This document shows positions 1 through 8,080 of a DNA stretch of 64,000 nucleotides, in pieces; the stretch's first letter is position 1, and every line of letters begins with the position of its first letter. A model generated the notes under the pieces. That model was given only the letters and a program-made list of their open reading frames with translations, ran no database searches and was not told the origin of the DNA. Where the stretch lies: the IMG/VR virus record IMGVR_UViG_3300031951_021456, positions 1 through 64,000 of that record. One strand, written 5' to 3'. The position numbers and the translations under genes are program-made.

Positions 1-102
1 GTGAAAGTTAATCATTGTTCAGTTGAACGAAGTGAATTAGGTCATTGCAAACCTGAAGCTGTTCATTTTAAGCCGAAACAAAAACGCGGCTGGTTTAGAT
101 AA
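1..102 (+). CDS. 3' part of small Cys-containing hypothetical protein, paralog of 280..489 (5' end probably outside the window)
   Basis: Open frame VKVNHCSVERSELGHCKPEAVHF...; shares GHCKPEAV with 280..489. Confidence 0.65.
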   Translation: MKVNHCSVERSELGHCKPEAVHFKPKQKRGWFR

Positions 103-108
103 CATTTA

Positions 109-128
109 CACACACACACACACACACA
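109..128. repeat. (CA)10 microsatellite in the leader of ORF 137..283
   Basis: Direct reading. Confidence 0.95.
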
Positions 129-136
129 TTAAAACA

Positions 137-283
137 ATGAAAGAACAAGTTACTATTTCAAAAGAAGAATATGACGAACTTTTATATGCTCGGAAAAAAC
201 TCTATGCTCTTGAACGGAGCGGTGTAGACAATTGGCAGTGGTATGATGTTGCAATGGAAGAAATGGATAATGAAGATTTATGA
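137..283 (+). CDS. 48-aa hypothetical protein (GVDNW family), not in ORF track
   Basis: MKEQVTISKEEYDELLYARKKLYALERSGVDNWQWYD...; paralog at 516..683; ATGA overlap with next gene. Confidence 0.75.
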   Translation: MKEQVTISKEEYDELLYARKKLYALERSGVDNWQWYDVAMEEMDNEDL

Positions 284-489
284 TGCAAGAGCTTAAATTT
301 TGTAAAGACTGTGACCACTACCGCATGGTTGCCAATGGTTCTGATGAATGCAAGTGCCCATGGATACCAAAAGAGATTAATTTGGTATCTGGAGAAAACC
401 GGGAATTGTACTGTTTTATAGAGCGTACCCCGAGGGGTCATTGCAAACCTGAAGCTGTTTACTTTACATCCATACAAAAACATTTTTAA
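280..489 (+). CDS. Small Cys-rich hypothetical protein
   Basis: CxxCxH...C...C pattern; ATGA coupling. Confidence 0.7.
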   Translation: MMQELKFCKDCDHYRMVANGSDECKCPWIPKEINLVSGENRELYCFIERTPRGHCKPEAVYFTSIQKHF

Positions 490-515
490 TTCTAACTTCT
501 ATTTAATTTAAAATT

Positions 516-683
516 ATGACAAAACAAACCTGCGACACTATTACAATCACAGTAAAGGAATATGACGAACTTTTACATGCTTGGAAAAAACTAATTGCCC
601 TTGAGGGTGGTGGCGTAGACAATTGGGAAGGGTATTATGATGCAATGGAAGAAATGGATGATGAAGAAGATGATGAATATTGA
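516..683 (+). CDS. 55-aa hypothetical protein (GVDNW family), not in ORF track
   Basis: EYDELLHAWKKLIALEGGGVDNWEGYYDAMEEMD matches 137..283. Confidence 0.75.
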   Translation: MTKQTCDTITITVKEYDELLHAWKKLIALEGGGVDNWEGYYDAMEEMDDEEDDEY

Positions 684-724
684 ACAAGCACACTAACAAC
701 TATCAATAAATTTAATCAAACAAA

Positions 725-1477
725 ATGGAACTTCAGCAACTTGACTGGAAAAATTACACAACTGAAACGAATATTTTCAACTATAAAATTCCAAATGTTG
801 ATGAAAATATTGCCACGATTGAAGTAATATCTACTAAGAATAGTAATAGCGGTGAAACAAAATCTGTAGTAACTATTAATAAGACCACAACTAATAAGGT
901 TCTGAAAGAGTGTACTCCAGCTTTTGTTAAGCGTTCTTTTTTTGAACTAATTAAAACTAAATCCCCATTTGATTATCGTTCTCTTACACTAGAAGATTAC
1001 CTATTTTCTGATGATAGCATTTTATCTGAAGATATATCGGAGAAAAATTTGATTTGGTTTTATTTTAGTGGAGATATGTTGTTTAAGACGAATGGAATTC
1101 CGATTGCCACACCAATATATTATGATTATAATTGTACTCCATTTTCAAACGAATATTGCTATCTTAAACCTTTATTAAATTATTTAAAAGAACATCCATG
1201 GGTCGTAAATAAAGAAGACCTTGAAATTGAAAACATACCATATTATAATTCTGAAAAGAATCGTGATAGATGTATTAGGGATATTTGTATTTGTCCAGAT
1301 CAAGATACCTATGATAGAGTTTATCAACAGTATAGTGGAGATAAATATTTTTCTCGTAGAATTAGAGAAGCTATTTCTAGCCAACTGTTTATGTATAATT
1401 CTGAAAAACACCATGATTGGCTCGGTATCGCACCTTTTCTAAAAAATCCACCCAAACAACTGGCACAAGACTCTTGA
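725..1477 (+). CDS. Hypothetical protein
   Basis: 250-aa ORF on the majority strand. Confidence 0.75.
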   Translation: MELQQLDWKNYTTETNIFNYKIPNVDENIATIEVISTKNSNSGETKSVVTINKTTTNKVLKECTPAFVKRSFFELIKTKSPFDYRSLTLEDYLFSDDSILSEDISEKNLIWFYFSGDMLFKTNGIPIATPIYYDYNCTPFSNEYCYLKPLLNYLKEHPWVVNKEDLEIENIPYYNSEKNRDRCIRDICICPDQDTYDRVYQQYSGDKYFSRRIREAISSQLFMYNSEKHHDWLGIAPFLKNPPKQLAQDS

Positions 1478-1502
1478 CCTTTTGAGAAAACTCTGCTAAC
1501 TT
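1445..1502 (+). promoter_or_regulatory. Sigma70-type early promoter with upstream half-palindrome
   Basis: TTGACC(1474)-17 bp-TAACTT(1497) with extended TG; AACTGGCAC at 1458-1466. Confidence 0.7.
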
Positions 1503-1514
1503 AAGTAAGTCAAG

Positions 1515-1572
1515 AGATGAGGCAGCAATCAAAAAGCTCTAGACATTTAATCTAACCAGCAAACTCATCTAG
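1515..1572 (+). ncRNA. CAGCA stem element copy 1, inner anticodon-like hairpin (TTT)
   Basis: AGATGAG/CTCATCT outer stem, GCAGCAA, inner TAGA-CATTTAA-TCTA. Confidence 0.65.
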
Positions 1573-1592
1573 TAACACACCACACAAAAATT

Positions 1593-1823
1593 ATGAAAAC
1601 TCATAGACAACTTGAACCACATGAAGTCCAGATGGTTCAAGAGCATGTTGATTTGGAAGCACGAATTCAGCGATTTCAGCAATTCATTCAAAATCCAGGA
1701 AATGTGAATTTTTCAGAAGCTGAAATTGCTAGAATGAAAGCTCAAGAGATGGCTATGAGCATGTATTTGAGCATCTTGAGTGATAGACTAGCTGTAGTAT
1801 TTAAAGAAACTGGAAACGGTTAA
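1593..1823 (+). CDS. Small coiled-coil phage protein (crAss001_48-like)
   Basis: EHVDLEARIQRFQQFI...QEMAMSMYLSILSDR pattern. Confidence 0.6.
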   Translation: MKTHRQLEPHEVQMVQEHVDLEARIQRFQQFIQNPGNVNFSEAEIARMKAQEMAMSMYLSILSDRLAVVFKETGNG

Positions 1824-1837
1824 TTAAATACAATAAA

Positions 1838-1875
1838 AAGTTGATACAGCATCAACAAAACAAACAATCAACTTG
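1838..1875 (+). promoter_or_regulatory. CAGCA stem element copy 2 (no inner hairpin) abutting the RBS of the DUF2828 gene
   Basis: AAGTTGAT-ACAGCA...ATCAACTT-GAGG-N6-ATG(1885). Confidence 0.65.
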
Positions 1876-1884
1876 AGGTTAATT

Positions 1885-3348
1885 ATGACTTTTATTCAAG
1901 CTCTTAAAAGTGAATTGAATACCACTACAACTGAAAATGGCGCAAAGGCTTATAATTCTACTACAAATGAATGCCTGGATCTTTATGGCTCAATCGGTGC
2001 ATGTCGTACTAATTTGACTCATGCAGAACGTCTCTTCTTTAATGCATATGAGCAAGACCCGGAAACTGCTGTAAGAATTCTATTCTATTCAAGGGATATT
2101 CGGGGCGCAAGTCAAGGCGAACGTGCAGTGTTTAGGGCATTAATGCCGAAACTTGCACAAAAGAATCCTAAGGTAGCTTCCCGCCTAGTTTCACTGATTC
2201 CATACTACGGTCGCTGGGATGATCTCCTGTGCCTTGAAGGAACTTTGGTTTGGACTGAGGTACTTGAGACTATCAAAACTCAACTAAATGAAGATCTTAA
2301 TAGTGAGAAAGTATCGCTAGCTGCAAAATGGATGCCGAGTATCAATGCTTCTTCAAAAGAAAGCAAGCGTCTTGGTCGTCTAATTGCAGATCACATGGGC
2401 TGGTCAGAACGACAGTACCGGAAGAATCTTGCAACTCTACGAGCAAAGATTAACATCGTAGAAACTTCAATGTGCAAAAAGGATTGGAGTTCTATTGATT
2501 ATGAACGTCTTCCTTCCCGCGCTGCGATGATGTATCGCAATGCATTCAAAAAACATGATGAGGATCGCTATTCTGAATATCTCTCTCGTGTAGAGAACGG
2601 TGAAGCAAAGATCAATACGGGAACTCTTTTTCCTTATGATATTGTGAATAAGTATCTCTACAAAGGTTCTACCAACGATAAGACTCTTGAACAACAATGG
2701 GATGCTCTTCCTGATTATATGGAAGGTTTGGAATTCAACGGACTTGTTGTTGCTGATGTTTCATATTCAATGACATGGAATGGGGGAATGCCAATGGCTG
2801 TATGTCTCTCTCTTGCAGTTTATATTGCTGAGCGCAATCAATCAGAGATTTGGAAAAACAAATTTCTAACTTTCTCTCAATCTCCAACACTTGAAACTAT
2901 TCTAGGTAACACTATTGAAGAAAAAATCAGACATATTCTCAAATCAGATCCGGGAGGAAACACTGATCTGATGGCTACATTTAAAGTAATTCTTGATTCC
3001 GCAACTTCCAATAATGTCGCAGCAAATGATATGCCACAGAAACTGATCATTGTTTCTGATATGCAATTTGATCAGGCTTGCAGATCTAACAAGCGTACTA
3101 ATTTTGAACAGATTCAAAAGCTGTATCGTAAGGCTGGTTACGAAATGCCAGAGCTAGTATTCTGGAATGTAAATGCAAGTGCTAATGTGCCTATTCAAGC
3201 TGATGACACTGGAACAGCTCTTGTTTCTGGCTGTAGTCCTGCTATTCTGAAGAGTGTTTTGAGTGGTAAAATCATATCTCCAGTAGAAGTGATGATGAAT
3301 AGTCTTTATGTGGAACGCTATGATCCAATTGGACTAGCCTTTGCATAA
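1885..3348 (+). CDS. DUF2828 family protein with C-terminal vWA domain (Ro60/TROVE-like architecture)
   Basis: TTENG, RDIRG..GER, YGRWDDL, LAAKWMP, MIDAS-like DVSYSM, SDMQFD, VFWNV; GAGG RBS before ATG 1885. Confidence 0.85.
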   Translation: MTFIQALKSELNTTTTENGAKAYNSTTNECLDLYGSIGACRTNLTHAERLFFNAYEQDPETAVRILFYSRDIRGASQGERAVFRALMPKLAQKNPKVASRLVSLIPYYGRWDDLLCLEGTLVWTEVLETIKTQLNEDLNSEKVSLAAKWMPSINASSKESKRLGRLIADHMGWSERQYRKNLATLRAKINIVETSMCKKDWSSIDYERLPSRAAMMYRNAFKKHDEDRYSEYLSRVENGEAKINTGTLFPYDIVNKYLYKGSTNDKTLEQQWDALPDYMEGLEFNGLVVADVSYSMTWNGGMPMAVCLSLAVYIAERNQSEIWKNKFLTFSQSPTLETILGNTIEEKIRHILKSDPGGNTDLMATFKVILDSATSNNVAANDMPQKLIIVSDMQFDQACRSNKRTNFEQIQKLYRKAGYEMPELVFWNVNASANVPIQADDTGTALVSGCSPAILKSVLSGKIISPVEVMMNSLYVERYDPIGLAFA

Positions 3349-3357
3349 ATAAACGGA

Positions 3358-3417
3358 AAGATGGTTCAGCAAATTTACAAAAACTGTTTTGCTATAACTG
3401 TTCCTCAAACCATCTTG
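3358..3417 (+). ncRNA. CAGCA stem element copy 3, inner anticodon-like hairpin (GCT)
   Basis: AAGATGGTT/AACCATCTT outer stem, CAGCAA, inner ACTGTT-TTGCTAT-AACTGT; late-promoter-like ATAAATA at 3345. Confidence 0.7.
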
Positions 3418-3423
3418 TTAAAC

Positions 3424-3533
3424 CGGGAAGTAGCTCAATTGATAGAGCAACGTAAAATGGATCTTGTTAAGATCTTAACCGCATTTAAAAGCTTTGGGTG
3501 CCGTGGTTGTAGGTTTAAGTCCTACCTTCCCGA
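3424..3533 (+). tRNA. tRNA-Pro(TGG) with 38-nt insertion (3453-3490) in the anticodon stem
   Basis: CGGGAAG/CTTCCCG acceptor, GCTC/GAGC D stem, ACG[insert]GC-TTTGGGT-GCCGT anticodon arm, GTAGG-TTTAAGT-CCTAC T arm. Confidence 0.8.
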
Positions 3534-3536
3534 TTC

Positions 3537-3574
3537 GTGGTAAGATCGTTTGAGATTTTCTTCTTACCACTTTT
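3537..3574 (+). terminator. Hairpin plus U-tract (terminator or processing signal)
   Basis: GTGGTAAGA...TCTTACCAC-TTTT, 16-nt loop. Confidence 0.45.
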
Positions 3575-3579
3575 CTAAT

Positions 3580-3631
3580 TAGATGATTCAGCAATTAATC
3601 TCTTACTGCTAATAAGACCAAAATCATCTAG
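3580..3631 (+). ncRNA. CAGCA stem element copy 4, canonical anticodon stem-loop (GCT)
   Basis: TAGATGATT/AATCATCTA outer stem, CAGCAA, inner TCTTA-CTGCTAA-TAAGA. Confidence 0.75.
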
Positions 3632-3644
3632 TCTAAATAATCAA

Positions 3645-3716
3645 AGCGGAGGAGTGTCACGGTAGCACGAGGGTCTCATAAGCCCTAAGAGTAAGTTCAA
3701 TTCTTACCTCTCGCCA
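3645..3716 (+). tRNA. tRNA with CAT anticodon (Met-like), bulged acceptor stem
   Basis: AGGGT-CTCATAA-GCCCT; GTAAG-TTCAATT-CTTAC; acceptor GCGGAG/CTC(T)CGC. Confidence 0.7.
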
Positions 3717-3743
3717 TTGATAGATTAATCTATCATATTTTAA

Positions 3744-3779
3744 ACCGATTTTAAAATTACAAATGACCATTTGATCGGT
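3744..3779 (+). promoter_or_regulatory. Candidate structured leader element A
   Basis: ACCGAT...TTAAA...TGACCATTTG-ATCGGT; covaries with 4468..4504. Confidence 0.5.
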
Positions 3780-3798
3780 ATGGTTTGGGAAAAATTAA

Positions 3799-4386
3799 AT
3801 GTTTAAATCTAATCTTGTTGCAACTATTCAGGTGAATGGAATCCCACTAAGGGAATTTGGTAGCAATGTATATCTACCATATGATACAGAATATCAAATT
3901 ATGTTAAAAAATAAGACCATTCTCAGGCAAGCGGTAAGAGTTACAATTGCTGGGGAAAGTATGTGGGATGGTAGTATTGTTTTAAATGGTCGTGAAACTT
4001 TTGATTATGGTAACTTTAATAGAAATAACAAGTTTAAATTTAAAAAACTTTCTGAGAATGGATCGCATAATTATCCATTTTTATTTGAAGATTGTTTAAT
4101 TATTATTCGCTTTGTTTCGGAAACTGTACCTATTATGGATTTGGATATGAATAAAAAAGCAACATATAATAAAACCGGATTTACTCCTAATGTTTCAGAT
4201 TGGGAAACCGTGTGGCCTGATTCTGAAGAAACAATGTTCTTGAAGTTAAATGGAGAATTTAAACATAAACAAATTGTGGAACCAATCACAGTAAAAACGA
4301 AGATTGAATGTAAATCATGTGGAACCAAAAATCCAGCAGGGTTTGAATATTGTTCAACATGTGGAGATAAAGTTATATTCAATTAA
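3799..4386 (+). CDS. Phage protein with C-terminal zinc ribbon, paralog of 4523..5224
   Basis: VNG..LREFG..VY.P...EY; C-terminal CKSCG...CSTCG. Confidence 0.8.
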   Translation: MFKSNLVATIQVNGIPLREFGSNVYLPYDTEYQIMLKNKTILRQAVRVTIAGESMWDGSIVLNGRETFDYGNFNRNNKFKFKKLSENGSHNYPFLFEDCLIIIRFVSETVPIMDLDMNKKATYNKTGFTPNVSDWETVWPDSEETMFLKLNGEFKHKQIVEPITVKTKIECKSCGTKNPAGFEYCSTCGDKVIFN

Positions 4387-4395
4387 TTAATAATT

Positions 4396-4452
4396 TAGAT
4401 GATTCAGCAATCTTAAAACTTTCTTATTGGTTTAGAAAACAAAATCATCTAG
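4396..4452 (+). ncRNA. CAGCA stem element copy 5, inner hairpin with TTGG loop
   Basis: TAGATGATT/AATCATCTA, CAGCAA, inner TTTCT-TATTGGTTT-AGAAA. Confidence 0.7.
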
Positions 4453-4467
4453 TCTAAATAAAAACTG

Positions 4468-4504
4468 ACAGACTTAAACACTAAAAACTGAGCATTTAGT
4501 CTGT
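4468..4504 (+). promoter_or_regulatory. Candidate structured leader element B
   Basis: ACAGAC-TTAAA...TGAGCATTTA-GTCTGT. Confidence 0.5.
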
Positions 4505-4522
4505 ATGCTCCCAAAGATAAAA

Positions 4523-5224
4523 ATGATGTACCAGAACAATCTTGCAGCGGCAATTAAGGTAAATGGAAACATTCTCCGAGAGTTTGGGGATACTGTTTAT
4601 ATTCCATTTGGCTCCGAATATCAAATTCGCCTAAGAAATTTAATTAGCTCTAGAGTTAAACTAAATGTTGAAATTGATGGACAAAACGTAACTGATGGTG
4701 GTCTAGTTTTAAATGCACTTCAATCAATTGATCTAGAGCGGTTTATTAGAAATGGAAATTTAACCACAGGCAATCGCTTTAAGTTTATTGAGAGAACTTC
4801 AAAAATTGAGAATCATCGTGGAATTAAACTAGAAGATGGTTTGATTATCATTCGCTATGAGTTTGAAATTCCACAAGTTACCTTCAAATCCTTATCCCAA
4901 CCAGTCTGGGATGCTTATGGTACTGCTAGGGTTGGGGGGACATATATAAATTCAGTATCGCAAAGATCAGTTTTCTATAATGAAACAGGAATTACTGTAG
5001 AAGGCTCTAAGAGTAATCAACAATTTAGTACAACAAATTGGCGTGGATCTTCGGGGGGAGAATATACCATAATTTTTAAACTCTTAGGTGAAACTGAAGA
5101 GAACAAAAAAGTAAGAGAACCAGTAACTGTAAAAACAAAACTTGAATGCAAAACTTGTGGAACCAAAAATCATGCGACATCTAAGTTTTGTTCAGAGTGT
5201 GGAACAGCTTTAGAAATCCTATAA
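4523..5224 (+). CDS. Phage protein with C-terminal zinc ribbon
   Basis: Paralog of 3799..4386; CKTCG...CSECG; start 4523/4526 by alignment with the paralog. Confidence 0.8.
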   Translation: MMYQNNLAAAIKVNGNILREFGDTVYIPFGSEYQIRLRNLISSRVKLNVEIDGQNVTDGGLVLNALQSIDLERFIRNGNLTTGNRFKFIERTSKIENHRGIKLEDGLIIIRYEFEIPQVTFKSLSQPVWDAYGTARVGGTYINSVSQRSVFYNETGITVEGSKSNQQFSTTNWRGSSGGEYTIIFKLLGETEENKKVREPVTVKTKLECKTCGTKNHATSKFCSECGTALEIL

Positions 5225-5260
5225 GATAAAAACTTTCCATAAATAGTCTTAAAAACTATA

Positions 5261-5704
5261 ATGGAAAAGTTATTTAAGCTTCTTAGTGATACACAAGCAA
5301 CACTCTTTGTTTTGTTTCAAAAAACTTGGAATTATCATCACAATGTTCATGGAACTGACTTCCCTCAGTTGCATGAACTTTTTGGTGAGCAATATACTGA
5401 AATGTTTGAGGAGATTGATCGCCTTAGTGAGCACATGAGATATCTCAACATTCGTCCAGTGTCCAGAATGGAGCGGATCGTAGAGGTTGCAGCCATTGAG
5501 GGGCCAGCAAACGCCAATCAGGAGCTTGATGCCCGTGGGATGGTAGAGCAGCTTCAGAGCGACAATGAGATGCTAATAGAGATGTTGAAGGATGTATCTG
5601 AAGAAGCCGAAAGTCAAAGGAGCTATGCAACGGCTAATCTTTCTCAAGATTTAATGGAAGCTCATGGTAAAAGTGTGTATAAATTGAGGTCATTTTTACA
5701 ATGA
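5261..5704 (+). CDS. dps: Dps / ferritin-like DNA protection protein
   Basis: YHHNVHG..F..LHELF.EQY....EIDRLSEH ferroxidase motifs; late-promoter-like ATAAATA at 5239. Confidence 0.9.
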   Translation: MEKLFKLLSDTQATLFVLFQKTWNYHHNVHGTDFPQLHELFGEQYTEMFEEIDRLSEHMRYLNIRPVSRMERIVEVAAIEGPANANQELDARGMVEQLQSDNEMLIEMLKDVSEEAESQRSYATANLSQDLMEAHGKSVYKLRSFLQ

Positions 5705-5770
5705 AATTCAGATATCTAAACAGTGCAGTGTAAGTGACTAAATAGATTCACTGTTAATCGGTGAATAATT

Positions 5771-6025
5771 ATGTTAAAGATTAGATGTAAACTTTGCAAT
5801 AGTGAAGTGGTTGCAAAGCCTGGGCAGTCTTCTAGCTGCAAGTGTTCAAATATGGCAACAATTCGTGGTGAATCTATTTCGGCCTTAGATTTATCTCAAG
5901 TTGTAATAGTTTCAGGTGTTCCTTCATTTAAGCAAACTAAGACTATTTTAACTTCTACAGATTTAATGTGGCAAGAGGAGCGTAGAAAAAGAGGAGTGAA
6001 AAAACTTAGCTTTGAGGAGCGGTGA
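5771..6025 (+). CDS. Small Cys-rich phage protein
   Basis: CxxC...CxC. Confidence 0.7.
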   Translation: MLKIRCKLCNSEVVAKPGQSSSCKCSNMATIRGESISALDLSQVVIVSGVPSFKQTKTILTSTDLMWQEERRKRGVKKLSFEER

Positions 6026-6079
6026 CAGTTTTTGATCTGTCCCTAGAGATCTAAGCACACTTCTAGCTGCTGCTATGCT
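6022..6079 (+). promoter_or_regulatory. Palindrome-associated early promoter
   Basis: GTGACAGTT-N4-ATCTGTCCC, 30 bp, TATGCT. Confidence 0.7.
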
Positions 6080-6103
6080 TAATAGACAAACCACAAACCC
6101 CCA

Positions 6104-6400
6104 ATGAACCTAAGCATTAAATTTGATCCTCTCACTAAAACCTTCCATTATCCTGATGGTGTTACTGAGACTTTGGATCAATACAATACCCGAAATGAAA
6201 GATTTGATTATATTCAAGCTCTTCAAAATGCTCTGGATCTACTGAAAGTTCTTTATCAGAATCCTGGATGTCTTAATCAGAAAGAATATCTTAAAGCAAA
6301 AGAAAAAATTCAAGAAGAGTTTGAATATTGGCAAGCTAACATCTTTCATGAGTATGAAGATGCTCGGGAAGATGATCCATGTAATGTCCACTTTACTTGA
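6104..6400 (+). CDS. Hypothetical protein
   Basis: ORF directly behind promoter. Confidence 0.7.
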   Translation: MNLSIKFDPLTKTFHYPDGVTETLDQYNTRNERFDYIQALQNALDLLKVLYQNPGCLNQKEYLKAKEKIQEEFEYWQANIFHEYEDAREDDPCNVHFT

Positions 6401-6409
6401 TTTTCAACC

Positions 6410-6559
6410 ATGAATGATCGCACTCGCCAAAACTGGCAAAAAATCAAAACTGCCCTAGAAGAATCAAACAAAACTGATTGTTATCTTTATACAAGAGCAT
6501 GTGAGATTGTAAAATCTGGAAGAGATCCAATGGAGGGGGGATTGTTTCGCCCTCTATGA
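6410..6559 (+). CDS. Small cyanophage-type hypothetical protein, not in ORF track
   Basis: MNDRTRQNWQKIKTALEESNKTDCYLYTRACEIVKSGRDPM; ATGA overlap with next gene. Confidence 0.7.
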   Translation: MNDRTRQNWQKIKTALEESNKTDCYLYTRACEIVKSGRDPMEGGLFRPL

Positions 6560-6753
6560 TTTTAAAACAAACTTGGATTACTCCAAAATACTATGACCAT
6601 CCAGAACTTGATCATTCTTCAACTAATCAAAAGCTTCTTTGTATTGAGTTTATTGATGAATCTTCAATAAAGGCGATTTCAGAAAAAGCTGCACGAATGA
6701 GAGCCCTTGAATTTTTTAATGAACCTTATGAACCACCAGAAGATCAACACTAA
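6556..6753 (+). CDS. Hypothetical protein
   Basis: Translationally coupled ORF. Confidence 0.55.
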   Translation: MILKQTWITPKYYDHPELDHSSTNQKLLCIEFIDESSIKAISEKAARMRALEFFNEPYEPPEDQH

Positions 6754-6851
6754 AGAAAAAGAGAAACAAAAGGAAGATTCAAACCAAGAATCTAAAAGTA
6801 ATGAAGATCTTAGCTACCTCAATCAACATGATGATGGTTGTTGATTTTTAT

Positions 6852-6924
6852 GCTCCATTAGCTCTCTGATGAAAGCGTCGCCCTCATAAGGCGAGAAAGG
6901 TGGGTTTGATCCCCACATGGAGCA
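6852..6924 (+). tRNA. tRNA with CAT anticodon (Met or Ile2)
   Basis: GCTCCAT/ATGGAGC acceptor; TCGCC-CTCATAA-GGCGA; GTGGG-TTTGATC-CCCAC. Confidence 0.85.
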
Positions 6925-6981
6925 TTACAATGTCTCAACTGTCCATCATTGTTTGACAAACAGAGCATTGTGGGTTAAACT
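6924..6981 (+). promoter_or_regulatory. Sigma70 early promoter with palindrome half-site
   Basis: AACTGTCCA(6937), TTGACA(6953)-17 bp-TAAACT(6976). Confidence 0.75.
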
Positions 6982-7040
6982 TAAAATGAGAGAAATCTCA
7001 GCAACCCACTCTTTACTTAAGAACCAAAACACCTAGCCAC

Positions 7041-7265
7041 ATGTCAGAGCAAACATTTGCAGAAAAGTTTAAAAAAGAGAATTACACTCTACAGAGAGCA
7101 CTTGACCGGGAGGTAATTCTACCTATTGATAAGCCCAAACTCTGGAAAAAAATCTTGAAGCATTTTGAAGATGAGGGTATTGAATTTTATGGTGAGATTG
7201 AAGCCGATTATATTATGATTCTTAATCGCATTTCTGAAGAACTTAATATCCAAGTGATGATCTAA
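7041..7265 (+). CDS. Hypothetical protein
   Basis: ORF behind promoter. Confidence 0.7.
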   Translation: MSEQTFAEKFKKENYTLQRALDREVILPIDKPKLWKKILKHFEDEGIEFYGEIEADYIMILNRISEELNIQVMI

Positions 7266-7498
7266 TGTCTGAACAAGTTAAAGTTCTACTTGAAACTGAA
7301 GATTTTCGTTTTGTAATTCGGGGAAAAATTTCCCACAACGATATGCCAGACTATAGAATACAAACAAAGCATCCTAGATTTGATGTTTGGAGAGATTCAG
7401 TGCTACTTGATAATGGCATTCAATGTTCATATGCAATGGAAGATCTTGAATATGCTAAAATGCTAGTTGGTCTTCCAGCATATATCAAAAATGAATAA
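7265..7498 (+). CDS. Hypothetical protein
   Basis: TAATG coupling. Confidence 0.7.
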   Translation: MSEQVKVLLETEDFRFVIRGKISHNDMPDYRIQTKHPRFDVWRDSVLLDNGIQCSYAMEDLEYAKMLVGLPAYIKNE

Positions 7499-7718
7499 AG
7501 AGACTTTACTCAGATTCTTTGGAAATAGCCTGCTAATTATCGGATATTGTGCCATTCTTTACAGTGATTTTAAAATTGGACTATCTATTAAATTTTTAGG
7601 AGGTCTTCTGATTATGCCATCTCTAATTCAACTGAAGATGTGGGATGGTATAATAATTACTTCATTTTTCTCCTTCATTGAAGGCACACGAATTATTCAA
7701 TTATATTTCTTCCAATAA
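7491..7718 (+). CDS. Small membrane protein
   Basis: Hydrophobic segments; ATG at 7491. Confidence 0.65.
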   Translation: MNKETLLRFFGNSLLIIGYCAILYSDFKIGLSIKFLGGLLIMPSLIQLKMWDGIIITSFFSFIEGTRIIQLYFFQ

Positions 7719-7720
7719 TT

Positions 7721-8080
7721 ATGAAAATCTCTAGAGCACATAAAAATTTTGCAGCTCGGTTAAGGCATCAAACTTCTCTAGAATATCCTGAACGATTTCT
7801 AGGACCTAATTGGAAGGATGTACTGAACTTTTGGCTCTATTTGGATACTTTGAGTCGTGAAGAACTTAAGATAGTTCATAATCGTTATTGTGCTTTAGGG
7901 TGGGCGGAATCCCTAAAGAATCTTACACTGAATGCTGCCAAAGTTACTATCGGCTATGAATATGAAGATGCAGCTTGGTTGGCACCTACTTCATTTGCAT
8001 CTGCTTATGCAACCCTTGAACTCATTGGTTCTCATAATCTAGAGGCCTTTACATTTCTTCCCTTGTTTTTGAATCTATGA
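7721..8080 (+). CDS. MKIS/GPNW paralog family, array 1 copy 1
   Basis: LEYPERFLGPNWKDVLNFWLYLDTL...ATLELIGSHNL..FLPLF. Confidence 0.85.
   Translation: MKISRAHKNFAARLRHQTSLEYPERFLGPNWKDVLNFWLYLDTLSREELKIVHNRYCALGWAESLKNLTLNAAKVTIGYEYEDAAWLAPTSFASAYATLELIGSHNLEAFTFLPLFLNL

What the first reader, a model, noticed from the sequence alone, without database searches (positions are those of the whole stretch)
3424..3533. tRNA-Pro(TGG) interrupted by a circularly permuted copy of the CAGCA element
Seen: removing 3453-3490 (TAAAATGGATCTTGTTAAGATCTTAACCGCATTTAAAA) restores a perfect anticodon arm ACGGC-TTTGGGT-GCCGT in an otherwise complete cloverleaf. The insert reads as the element's 3' half (AAAA..GGATCTTG) followed by its 5' half (AAGATCTT..CCGCA + A-rich linker), so the tRNA itself takes the place of the cargo next to the anticodon loop. 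It is too short for a group I/II intron and sits at a non-canonical position (29/30). Inference: either a protein-dependent removable intron giving conditional tRNA maturation, or a whole-tRNA decoy tagged for the DUF2828 protein. It links the element to tRNA biology.
Basis: partly seen in the sequence, partly recalled or inferred. Interest (0 to 1): 0.85.

Follow-up and report, generated by a model that had tools for sequence, protein, structure and literature searches.

The report
tRNA carrying a Ro-like protein handle
A phage tRNA-Pro gene is split in its anticodon stem by a 38-base hairpin that is the shared "handle" of a family of small RNAs found next to a Ro60-like protein gene in hundreds of phages, so it is most likely a tRNA-shaped partner RNA of that protein and neither a dead tRNA nor a classical intron.

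Summary
Window 3424-3533 matches the Rfam tRNA model (44.6 bits). Removing 3453-3490 gives a canonical 72-nt tRNA-Pro(UGG). The insert is a 7-bp hairpin followed by UAA-CCGCA, which is the circular permutation of the stand-alone "helix + CAGCAAU ... AAAA + helix" elements at 1515-1570, 1838-1874, 3358-3416, 3578-3632 and 4395-4452.

The insert is not unique. At least 30 distinct tRNA-shaped units with the same hairpin occur beside DUF2828 genes, including one in the cultured Synechococcus phage B3, where it is annotated as a pseudo-tRNA.

The DUF2828/DUF7788 protein (1885-3348) models as a Ro60 fold. The CAGCAA handle sits on the gene's strand beside this gene in phages of cyanobacteria, E. 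coli, Bacillus, Listeria, Staphylococcus, Campylobacter, Mycobacterium and Sinorhizobium. One copy abuts the gene's own ribosome-binding site.

The cargo of the stand-alone elements is usually a tRNA piece: an anticodon arm or a T arm. Near-identical copies differ only in the anticodon.

Best reading (0.6): a tRNA-shaped Y-RNA-like partner of a Ro60-like protein that displays an anticodon loop. A removable intron remains possible (about 0.2). Protein binding and the biological role are inferred, not shown.

The parts
1515..1570 (+). Stand-alone handle element E0. Helix AGATGAG (1515-1521) / CTCATCT (1564-1570), CAGCA at 1523-1527, inner 4-bp hairpin with 7-nt loop CATTTAA (1540-1554).
   Evidence: Read from sequence. 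The same element type precedes the gene in relatives and carries Lys-like loops CTTTTAA or CTCTTAA.
1838..1874 (+). Leader handle element. Helix AAGTTGAT / ATCAACTT, CAGCA at 1847-1851. Its 3' strand abuts the Shine-Dalgarno GAGG (1875-1878) and the start codon ATG at 1885.
   Evidence: A helix + CAGCA element ending at or near the ribosome-binding site recurs in most loci, including relatives at 36-46% protein identity.
1885..3348 (+). Ro60-like protein (DUF2828 + DUF7788 vWA domain, MIDAS motif DxSxS), 487 aa from the ATG at 1885.
   Evidence: Pfam hits PF11443 and PF25043. PHROG 850 'RNA-binding protein'. AlphaFold2 model with mean pLDDT 82.6. The top 8 Foldseek PDB hits are all Ro60, with E 3e-7 to 3e-4, query-normalised TM 0.42-0.56 and 507-574 aligned columns. 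D295, S297 and S299 are invariant in the family alignment.
3358..3416 (+). Stand-alone handle element E1. Helix AAGATGGTT / AACCATCTT, CAGCA at 3367-3371.
3424..3533 (+). tRNA-Pro(UGG)-shaped RNA with the handle inserted between positions 29 and 30 of the anticodon stem.
   Evidence: Rfam tRNA model, 44.6 bits. ARAGORN calls tRNA-Pro after removal of the insert. The consensus fold of 20 homologous units keeps the acceptor stem, D arm, handle hairpin, distal anticodon pairs and T arm, with compensatory changes in 22 of 25 pairs.
3453..3490 (+). The insert, or handle: UAAAAU, hairpin 3459-3475 (GGATCTT-GTT-AAGATCT), UAA, CCGCA (3479-3483), linker TTTAAAA.
3491..3501 (+). Distal anticodon arm retained next to the handle: GC, loop TTTGGGT, GC.
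3578..3632 (+). Stand-alone handle element E2. Its cargo is an anticodon-arm mimic: stem TCTTA / TAAGA with loop CTGCTAA (3601-3617).
3646..3715 (+). tRNA-Met(CAU), a neighbour in the same RNA cluster.
4395..4452 (+). Stand-alone handle element E3. Helix TTAGATGATT / AATCATCTAG, CAGCA at 4405-4409.

Best explanation
Window 3424-3533 is a tRNA-Pro-derived, tRNA-shaped non-coding RNA. It carries, inside its anticodon stem, the binding handle for the Ro60-like DUF2828/vWA protein encoded just upstream. The handle is a short helix followed by (U)AAC(A/C)GCAAU and preceded by an A-rich run.

The RNA belongs to a family that all share this handle. In stand-alone members, the 5' and 3' ends of a 45-70 nt RNA form the helix, and the interior is usually an anticodon-arm or T-arm mimic. 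In tRNA-embedded members, a loop closes the helix and a whole tRNA body is attached at the break point.

Inferred mechanism:
- The cluster is transcribed together with the gene.
- The RNAs are cut out by the ordinary tRNA-processing enzymes.
- Each RNA is bound through its handle by the Ro60-like protein, as Y RNAs are bound by Ro60.
- The copy in the mRNA leader, which abuts the ribosome-binding site, gives feedback control of the protein's translation.
- The particle exposes a tRNA body and an anticodon loop to some tRNA-recognising partner, possibly host anticodon-targeting defences or tRNA quality control.

Shown here: the sequence and structure anatomy, the Ro60 fold, co-localisation and co-orientation across distant phages, helix covariation, tRNA-piece cargo, and anticodon-only changes between near-identical copies. 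Not shown: protein binding, RNA processing, feedback control and the biological role.
For: 1. The protein is Ro60-like. The eight best PDB fold matches are all Ro60, and vWA domains follow. The family is annotated 'Ro-like RNA binding protein' or 'RNA-binding protein' in phage records.

2. The handle is tied to the gene.
- In 69 non-identical loci there are 123 stand-alone elements on the gene strand and 23 on the other strand, and they peak within 500 nt of the gene.
- The covariance model gives 127 hits, all but one on the gene strand.
- No other protein neighbour is conserved across the 78 metagenomic loci.

3. The handle persists at 34-40% protein identity, in cultured phages of Mycobacterium, E. 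coli, Bacillus, Listeria, Staphylococcus, Campylobacter and Sinorhizobium and in Synechococcus phage B3.

4. The helices covary.

5. A handle element sits directly before the gene's ribosome-binding site in most loci.

6. The cargo consists of tRNA pieces.
- 69 of 119 stand-alone elements have an inner hairpin with a 7-nt loop, against 35.2 +/- 4.4 in shuffled interiors.
- 23 have the Y32-U33...R37 anticodon-loop signature, against 2.8 +/- 1.5 (maximum 7 in 200 shuffles).
- About 10 carry a TTCGATT T-arm mimic.

7. Some tRNA-shaped units cannot be pre-tRNAs.
- Some have no anticodon loop at all: the first unit in L004, and L026 7215-7332.
- One scaffold with A73 and a short variable arm carries CCA, GCA or GTA in three close relatives.

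8. The unit is under purifying selection while its anticodon switches. L022 and L092 are 92.5% identical in flanking DNA. Within the 113-nt unit they differ only by TGG versus TAA plus one A-run indel.

9. The elbow pair covaries: A19-U56 in the window and L022, G19-C56 in B3.

10. There is precedent. Bacterial and phage Y RNAs lie next to Ro60 genes and mimic tRNA (PMC4201824, PMC12135203). Bas63 gp130 is Ro60-like, lies upstream of a tRNA array and counters the Ppl defence, and its authors guessed that some of those tRNAs are Y RNAs (bioRxiv 10.1101/2024.10.10.617714).
Against: - No binding or expression data exist. The partnership rests on genomic association and a fold match (query-normalised TM 0.42-0.56 for the Ro60 hits, 11-15% sequence identity).
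- The protein has no sequence-level match to TROVE/Ro60, and no Rfam Y RNA or YrlA model matches.
- The window's own copy has a fully consistent proline identity set: C1-G72, A73, G35, G36 and G37. Removing the insert restores a perfect anticodon arm, as expected of a real pre-tRNA.
- In L015 the 25-tRNA array within the locus lacks any other tRNA-Pro, which would fit a translational role.
- No handle was seen beside the gene in Vibrio phage ValKK3.
Confidence: 0.6

Rival explanations
1. The insert is a protein-dependent intron. It is cut out, perhaps with the Ro-like protein as chaperone and a host or phage endonuclease plus an RtcB-type ligase, to give a working tRNA-Pro, so that tRNA supply is conditional.
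For: Removal restores an exact 5-bp stem and 7-nt loop with U33 and G37, and a full proline identity set. Many relatives likewise restore Pro, Asn, Thr, Arg, Asp or Val anticodon arms at position 29/30 or 28/29. The L015 array lacks another tRNA-Pro. Listeria phage LP-048 has an RtcB-like ligase 1.3 kb from its DUF2828 gene.
Against: The same handle occurs in stand-alone RNAs and in the mRNA leader, where there is nothing to splice. Some units lack an anticodon loop. Anticodons change on scaffolds whose acceptor identity does not fit: UAA on a Pro scaffold, and CCA/GCA/GUA on one A73 short-arm scaffold. No bulge-helix-bulge can be drawn at the junctions. No endonuclease or ligase is a conserved neighbour in the 78 metagenomic loci. 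No Rfam intron family matches.
Confidence: 0.2
2. The gene is a decayed pseudo-tRNA. A repeated element happened to insert into a tRNA gene and the product has no function.
For: GenBank annotates the Synechococcus phage B3 copy as 'tRNA-Pseudo'. ARAGORN does not call the window copy. The element is repeated locally.
Against: The architecture recurs in at least 30 distinct units across relatives sharing 36-100% protein identity. Compensatory changes occur in the acceptor stem, T arm and handle helix. The elbow pair covaries. The unit is far better conserved than its flanks, with 2 changes in 113 nt against 92.5% flank identity.
Confidence: 0.04
3. The CAGCA elements are processing or termination punctuation for tRNA clusters, recognised by a host RNase or another factor. 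They are unrelated to the DUF2828 protein, and the copy inside the tRNA is a by-product.
For: The elements flank tRNAs within a few nucleotides of their ends. A few lie inside tRNA arrays several kb from the gene. DUF2828 genes themselves sit beside tRNA arrays.
Against: The elements cluster within 500 nt of the gene and are not spread along the 24-28-tRNA arrays. They are present beside the gene where few or no tRNAs are near: LeBron, Staphylococcus and Campylobacter phages. A copy sits in the gene's own leader. The CAGCAA motif is kept across hosts with very different RNases.
Confidence: 0.12

Closest known systems
Ro60-Y RNA particles, especially bacterial and phage YrlA (tRNA-like Y RNAs; PMC4201824, PMC12135203)
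   Same: A ring-plus-vWA protein with the Ro60 fold. The partner RNA genes lie next to the protein gene, often several in tandem. The RNA has a terminal stem made by its 5' and 3' ends, with a short conserved motif just after the 5' strand. The RNA body mimics parts of tRNA (T arm, D arm, acceptor stem).
   Different: The protein belongs to the DUF2828 family and has no TROVE match by sequence. The motif is CAGCAA, not GNCGAA. No Rfam Y RNA or YrlA hit. The cargo includes anticodon-arm mimics and whole tRNAs with open acceptor ends. In the tRNA form the handle is an internal hairpin, which is the reverse permutation of YrlA, whose ends lie in the anticodon position and whose acceptor stem is closed. 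The anticodon triplet switches between close relatives.
Bas63 gp130 (Felixounavirus Ro60-like protein that counters the Ppl defence; bioRxiv 10.1101/2024.10.10.617714)
   Same: Probably the same protein family. The Felixounavirus homologue in AYO145A shares 36.7% identity with the window protein and also lies directly upstream of a tRNA array. The authors guessed that some of those tRNAs are Y RNAs.
   Different: That paper names no RNA element. Here the shared CAGCAA handle is defined and is found in AYO145A at L083 5734-5800, about 5902-5955 and 6317-6387. Bas63 itself was not examined here.
Archaeal and eukaryal protein-spliced tRNA introns, including non-canonical positions such as 29/30 (from general knowledge)
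   Same: A short insert in the anticodon arm whose removal restores a normal tRNA.
   Different: No bulge-helix-bulge. The hosts are bacteria. No splicing endonuclease is seen among conserved neighbours. The same module is used outside tRNAs.
Group I introns in bacterial and phage tRNA anticodon loops (from general knowledge)
   Same: They interrupt the anticodon region of a tRNA gene.
   Different: The insert is 38 nt against more than 200 nt. It lies in the stem, not the loop. No Rfam intron match.
Phage tRNAs and tRNA repair used against anticodon nucleases (T4 Pnkp/Rnl versus PrrC, T5 tRNA versus PARIS; from general knowledge)
   Same: Phage-encoded tRNA-related RNAs whose anticodon identity matters in conflict with the host.
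   Different: Those are normal, chargeable tRNAs or repair enzymes. Here the anticodon arms are mounted on a protein handle, and a decoy role is only inferred.

Membership tests
tRNA (Rfam RF00005) | Cloverleaf with acceptor stem, D arm and T arm | tested here: met
   44.6 bits against a gathering score of 29. The consensus fold of 20 homologues keeps these stems with compensatory changes.
tRNA (Rfam RF00005) | Continuous 5-bp anticodon stem with a 7-nt loop | tested here: not met
   A 38-nt insert lies between positions 29 and 30. ARAGORN fails on the native sequence and succeeds only after the insert is deleted.
tRNA (Rfam RF00005) | Acceptor and anticodon identity elements that agree with each other | tested here: inconclusive
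   The window copy agrees: C1-G72, A73, G35, G36 and G37, as in the array tRNA-Pro genes of relatives. Relatives do not: UAA on the same scaffold, and CCA/GCA/GTA on one A73 scaffold.
Y RNA / YrlA (Ro60 partner RNAs) | Encoded next to a Ro60 protein gene | tested here: met
   The RNA starts 76 nt downstream of a protein whose model matches Ro60 structures. This holds at the level of fold only.
Y RNA / YrlA (Ro60 partner RNAs) | Partner protein is a TROVE-domain Ro60 by sequence | tested here: not met
   Pfam gives only DUF2828 and DUF7788 at E <= 0.01. A family profile finds no Ro60 chain in the PDB by sequence.
Y RNA / YrlA (Ro60 partner RNAs) | Terminal stem formed by the 5' and 3' ends, with a conserved motif after the 5' strand | tested here: inconclusive
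   Met in topology by the stand-alone elements. Not met by the tRNA-embedded form, where the helix is an internal hairpin.
Y RNA / YrlA (Ro60 partner RNAs) | GNCGAAN0-1G or GGUCCGA Ro-binding motif; match to Rfam Y RNA or YrlA models | tested here: not met
   The motif is (A)CAGCAA(U). No Rfam hit other than tRNA, tmRNA-type and tRNA-Sec models in the window, LeBron, AYO145A, B3, L003 and L026.
Y RNA / YrlA (Ro60 partner RNAs) | tRNA-like module | tested here: met
   A whole tRNA body here. Anticodon-arm or T-arm mimics in the stand-alone members.
Y RNA / YrlA (Ro60 partner RNAs) | Physically bound by the Ro protein | not testable with these tools
   Needs pull-down, gel shift or a solved structure.
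Protein-spliced (bulge-helix-bulge) tRNA intron | Two 3-nt bulges separated by a 4-bp helix at the splice sites | tested here: not met
   Tested by inspection of the window and of alignment A4. The junctions flank a three-way junction and no such motif can be drawn.
Protein-spliced (bulge-helix-bulge) tRNA intron | Splicing endonuclease and ligase available | not tested
   Only neighbourhoods were compared, and no conserved partner gene was found in the 78 metagenomic loci. Whole genomes and hosts were not searched.
Group I intron | Size above about 200 nt with the conserved P1-P9 core | tested here: not met
   The insert is 38 nt. No Rfam intron hit at E <= 1.
Repeated extragenic palindrome or miniature mobile element | No strand preference; target-site duplication or terminal inverted repeats at the DNA level | tested here: not met
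   Strong strand bias: 123 against 23 stand-alone elements, and 126 against 1 model hits. No duplication is visible at the junctions.

The most novel reading that the evidence does not exclude
Phages that carry a DUF2828 Ro60-like protein encode a battery of small RNAs. Each mounts an anticodon arm, a T arm or a whole tRNA on a common protein handle. The displayed anticodon is the specificity determinant and switches quickly between related phages. The particle would act as a decoy or trap for host factors that read anticodon loops, such as anticodon nucleases of anti-phage defence systems.
Probability: 0.25. Interest if true: 0.9.

Novelty: new variant of a known kind. Interest (0 to 1): 0.8.

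Why it matters
DUF2828 proteins occur in at least 711 deposited phage genomes, including model phages of E. coli, Listeria, Staphylococcus, Bacillus, Campylobacter and Mycobacterium. Their RNA partners have not been defined.

A conserved CAGCAA handle gives a direct, testable answer to what this Ro-like protein binds. It would explain many 'pseudo-tRNA' calls in phage genomes. It would extend the Ro60-Y RNA idea to a modular system in which tRNA pieces, and whole tRNAs, are the cargo.

If the displayed anticodons prove to be decoys, this would be a new kind of phage counter-defence. It would also give a mechanism for the published finding that a Ro60-like phage protein neutralises a defence system.

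Tried and rejected
- Megablast of window 1-8000 against deposited phages found nothing.
- Sequence searches of the protein and of a 27-member family profile against PDB chains found no Ro60. Only the fold search did.
- The Rfam scans gave no family for the elements.
- The promoter and terminator scan of 1300-4700 was uninformative, with fewer hits than in shuffles.
- Brute-force splicing followed by ARAGORN was too permissive to assign anticodons. I replaced it with frame-based extraction and reading by eye.
- A long-range pairing of 3469-3478 with 3550-3559 was judged to be chance, because 3550-3559 lies in the loop of a local hairpin.
- Most exact 16-mer hits in the viral collection were chance matches in coding DNA. 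They were used only after filtering.
- One apparent stand-alone element, L026 6714-6770, turned out to be part of a tRNA-shaped unit at 6664-6775.
- The test of whether interrupted tRNAs fill gaps in the phage tRNA arrays gave a mixed answer and decides nothing.
[quoted passage not shown] I rejected it as the main structure because the variable helix positions covary within each element, not between elements.
Full report
**1. The observation**

The Rfam tRNA model matches the whole stretch at 44.6 bits, against a gathering score of 29. The alignment leaves a 49-nt gap in the anticodon arm. ARAGORN does not call the gene as it stands.

Deleting 3453-3490 gives a 72-nt sequence that ARAGORN folds as tRNA-Pro(tgg). 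Its anticodon arm is ACGGC-TTTGGGT-GCCGT, with C1-G72 and A73. That is the same acceptor signature as every uninterrupted tRNA-Pro(UGG) in the tRNA arrays of related phages.

The insert reads as follows:
- UAAAAU
- a 7-bp hairpin, 3459-3465 pairing with 3469-3475, loop GUU
- UAA
- CCGCA at 3479-3483
- an A/U-rich linker

Stand-alone elements with helix AGATNNTT / AANNATCT, CAGCA after the 5' strand and an A run before the 3' strand lie at 3358-3416, 3578-3632 and 4395-4452. I found two more at 1515-1570 and 1838-1874.

**2. The insert is recurrent**

The window is the start of a 248-kb viral contig. The ORF upstream, 1885-3348 from its ATG, carries Pfam DUF2828 and DUF7788.

Eighty loci encoding relatives were fetched. 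In the closest relative outside the window's own sequence, L003 (81% protein identity), the gene is followed by:
- a stand-alone element
- a tRNA-shaped unit with an insert at the same 29/30 site, with hairpin AAATCTC / GAGATTT followed by TAACAGCA
- another stand-alone element
- tRNA-Met
- another stand-alone element
- a third kind of tRNA-shaped unit, whose insert is AAAAATGATCT-agac-AGATCATT-CAGCAAT

That last insert is the plain circular permutation of the stand-alone AGATGATT-CAGCAAT...AAAATCATCT.

At least 30 distinct tRNA-shaped units of this kind were extracted. Some come from relatives with only 36-46% protein identity.

A covariance model of the insert gave 127 matches with E <= 1 in 785 kb. 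All but one lie on the strand of the gene. On the resulting alignment the hairpin has 86 double-change cells against 39.7 in shuffles (0 of 500 shuffles reach it), and slid controls score much lower. That alignment is fitted to the model and includes weak hits.

A MAFFT alignment of 20 units that restore an anticodon arm, folded independently, gives the acceptor stem, D arm, handle hairpin, the two distal anticodon pairs and the T arm. 22 of the 25 pairs show compensatory changes. The sequence AC-N-GCA is invariant except for the N.

The cultured Synechococcus phage B3 (MN695334, Kyanoviridae) has the same layout. Its unit is annotated 'tRNA-Pseudo-GCA'.

**3. The protein**

Sequence methods do not connect the protein to any solved structure. 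An AlphaFold2 model built on a 27-sequence alignment has mean pLDDT 82.6. Its eight best Foldseek matches in the PDB are all Ro60:
- E-values from 3e-7 to 3e-4
- query-normalised TM-scores of 0.42-0.56
- 507-574 aligned columns

The next matches are vWA domains. The invariant residues D295, S297 and S299 fit a MIDAS motif.

The family is large. More than 4,245 proteins were found in the metagenome search and 711 deposited phage records have a match. It is annotated 'Ro-like RNA binding protein' in mycobacteriophages, and 'RNA-binding protein' or 'DUF2828' elsewhere. The Ro-likeness is therefore known at the level of annotation. I found no paper that defines the RNA partner.

**4. The handle goes with the gene**

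In 69 non-identical loci there are 123 stand-alone elements on the gene strand and 23 on the other strand. Of those on the gene strand, 62 start in the first 500 nt downstream of the gene (a bin that also includes any inside it) and 15 start in the last 500 nt upstream. The elements are not spread along the 24-28-tRNA arrays that often lie upstream. The variable helix positions covary within each element, for example GG/CC, GA/TC, AG/CT and TAA/TTA. No other protein neighbour is conserved across the 78 metagenomic loci.

The same design recurs on the gene strand, directly beside the gene, in cultured phages of very different hosts. The design is a helix, 0-3 nt, CAGCAA, an interior, and then the 3' strand, which in the cyanophage-type loci and in several of these phages follows an A-rich run.
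- Mycobacterium phage LeBron: three tandem copies after gp53
- E. coli Felixounavirus AYO145A: three copies
- Bacillus phage Thrax2: three copies
- Listeria phage LP-048: three copies
- Staphylococcus phage S-CoN_Ph7: three copies
- Campylobacter phage F358: two copies
- Sinorhizobium phage phiN3: three copies, one with tRNA-like cargo

Vibrio phage ValKK3 showed none.

In most loci, including distant ones, one element ends at the ribosome-binding site of the DUF2828 gene itself. In the window this is ATCAACTT, then GAGG, then ttaatt, then ATG at 1885. The simplest reading is that the protein binds its own leader. That is an inference.

**5. What the elements carry**

I analysed 119 distinct stand-alone elements.
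- 69 have an inner hairpin with a 7-nt loop. Shuffled interiors give 35.2 +/- 4.4, with a maximum of 49.
- 23 have the anticodon-loop signature Y32-U33...R37. Shuffled interiors give 2.8 +/- 1.5, with a maximum of 7 in 200 shuffles.

The loops are those of real tRNAs:
- TTTGGGT (Pro)
- CTTTTAA and CTCTTAA (Lys). These are typical of the element just upstream of the gene, including in distant relatives.
- CTGCTAA (Ser). This is window element 3578-3632.
- CTGAAAA (Phe), CTGTAAA (Tyr), CTGCAAA (Cys), CTCCAAA (Trp) and TTTGTAA (Thr). The Cys and Trp loops, and one of the two Tyr copies (L028), belong to the tRNA-shaped unit of class (iii) in section 6 (L026 6664-6775 and its relatives), not to stand-alone elements.

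About ten more elements carry a T-arm mimic, xxGG-TTCGATT-CCxx.

So the family consists of a common handle plus a tRNA piece. The tRNA-embedded form reads 5'-AAAA-H3-loop-H5-CAGCAAU-anticodon arm-3', with the tRNA body joined at the two open ends. This is the exact permutation of the stand-alone 5'-H5-CAGCAAU-anticodon arm-AAAA-H3-3'.

**6. Intron or partner RNA**

Three classes of tRNA-shaped unit occur, often in the same locus.
- (i) Handle at 29/30 or 28/29 with the distal anticodon arm retained. Examples are the window, B3, and L003, L015, L021, L022, L024, L026, L027, L029, L050, L056, L061 and L113.
- (ii) Handle capping the anticodon stem, with no anticodon loop at all. Examples are the first unit of L004, the 6889-6999 unit of L007, the units of L009 and L010, the 7076-7187 unit of L018, and L026 7215-7332.
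- (iii) Handle between the D arm and an intact anticodon arm. Examples are L026 6664-6775 and L105.

Class (ii) cannot yield a tRNA by any splicing.

In class (iii), one scaffold with A73 and a short variable arm carries CCA, GCA or GTA in three phages whose DUF2828 genes are 96-98% identical. By established identity rules (G73 for Trp, U73 for Cys, a long variable arm for bacterial Tyr), these cannot all be chargeable.

In class (i), L022 and L092 are 92.5% identical in flanking DNA. Within the 113-nt unit they differ only by TGG versus TAA in the anticodon and one A-run indel. If substitutions fell at random, the chance that both would land in the triplet is about 5e-4. A UAA anticodon on a proline scaffold would also lose the G35 and G36 that ProRS needs. 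B3 has TCG on the same C1-G72/A73 scaffold.

The elbow pair covaries: A19-U56 in the window and L022, G19-C56 in B3. This indicates selection for the tRNA L-shape.

No bulge-helix-bulge can be drawn at the junctions. No Rfam intron model matches. No nuclease or ligase is a conserved neighbour in the 78 metagenomic loci, although Listeria phage LP-048 has an RtcB-like ligase 1.3 kb away.

Evidence in favour of an intron:
- Removal restores the anticodon arm exactly.
- The window copy has a consistent proline identity set.
- In L015, the 25 tRNAs in the locus include no other tRNA-Pro. The test of array complementarity is mixed overall.

**7. Mechanism proposed**

- Shown: the anatomy, the protein fold, the association with the gene, the covariation, the tRNA-piece cargo and the anticodon switching.
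- Inferred: the cluster is co-transcribed with the gene. In B3 and L026 a TTGACA...TA(A/T)AAT promoter-like site precedes the RNA cluster.
- Inferred: RNase P and the 3' tRNA-processing enzymes release both the tRNAs and the elements between them. The elements end 6-13 nt before, and start 1-3 nt after, the tRNAs.
- Inferred: the Ro60-like protein binds each RNA through the handle, and binds its own leader for feedback.
- Inferred: the particle presents tRNA parts to a partner.

The nature of that partner is open. The published observation that a Ro60-like Felixounavirus protein counters the Ppl defence system (bioRxiv 10.1101/2024.10.10.617714), together with the fast anticodon switching, points to host-phage conflict. 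Anticodon nucleases are the obvious candidates, but nothing here tests that.

**8. Comparison with known systems, and novelty**

The closest known system is Ro60 with its Y RNAs. Bacterial and phage YrlA RNAs sit next to the Ro60 gene and mimic tRNA (PMC4201824). Thermus phage phiLo Ro60 binds two adjacent Y-like RNAs (PMC12135203).

The present system works like that one, but it fails several membership tests:
- no TROVE match by sequence
- a different motif, CAGCAA rather than GNCGAA
- no Rfam Y RNA or YrlA match
- a reversed permutation. Here the acceptor end is open and the handle is an internal hairpin. In YrlA the ends are at the anticodon position and the acceptor stem is closed.

The modular cargo and the switching anticodons have, as far as the searches here show, not been described. 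I rate it a new variant of a known kind.

**9. Limits**

- Only 64 kb of the 248-kb contig could be read.
- No expression or binding data exist.
- The fold match is moderate.
- Pattern scans were selected for pairing, so their significance rests on the strand, position and shuffle controls.
- The window's copy was in the training set of model R1.

Noticed in passing
L026 4531-4782: A cyanobacterial-type two-piece (permuted) tmRNA is encoded on this phage contig, between the tRNA array and the DUF2828 gene (Rfam cyano_tmRNA, 116 bits). This points to cyanobacterial hosts for this phage group.
   Followed up: no
L221 5858-7069 (Listeria phage LP-048): An RtcB-like 'tRNA-splicing ligase' gene lies 1.3 kb downstream of the DUF2828 gene. 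This recalls the rsr-yrlBA-rtcBA operon of Salmonella.
   Followed up: no
L105, about 3565-3595: A hairpin ACATCA / TGATGT just after a handle-bearing tRNA-like unit has the loop GGCTGGTCCG, which resembles the 5' Ro-binding sequence of vertebrate Y RNAs. It may be chance.
   Followed up: no
L101 ~7160-7290; L102 ~7430-7560; L119 ~2190-2320: Three other viral contigs have tRNA genes with the same 5' half ending in GAGCAACGTAAAAT, but followed by different, longer inserts without CAGCA. No DUF2828 gene was found in those loci.
   Followed up: partly
window 3538-3575 and 3716-3740: Hairpins followed by T runs lie directly after the interrupted tRNA and after tRNA-Met. These are GTGGTAAGA...TCTTACCAC-TTTT and GATAGATTAATCTATC-ATATTTT. 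They are possible terminators or processing stems, and the simple scan did not pick them up.
   Followed up: partly
window 3799-4386 and 4505-5224: Two paralogous ORFs have C-terminal zinc-ribbon motifs (DUF7577 / Zn_Ribbon_1). They are shared only with the closest relatives L003-L005, and a handle element lies between them.
   Followed up: no
window 5261-5704: A ferritin-like domain protein (PF00210, E 3e-21) is encoded a few kb from the RNA cluster.
   Followed up: no
L058 5001-6491: The DUF2828 gene of this relative has one in-frame stop codon. It could be a pseudogene, a recoded stop or a sequencing error.
   Followed up: no
L083 about 5815-5893 (E. coli phage AYO145A): An unannotated tRNA-like sequence lies between two handle elements. 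It has acceptor stem GCGGGT / ACCCGC and T arm GCAGG-TTCGACT-CCTGC. The record also lists two 'tRNA-Pseudo' genes in the same array.
   Followed up: no
L007 6740-6823 and L018 6725-6807: A miniature unit combines an acceptor stem and a T arm with a GGGA-capped hairpin and the handle, and has no D arm or anticodon arm.
   Followed up: partly
window 1593-1823: A small ORF with a crAss001_48-related domain (PF21825) sits between the two upstream handle elements. In L007 the two elements are adjacent, with no ORF between them.
   Followed up: no
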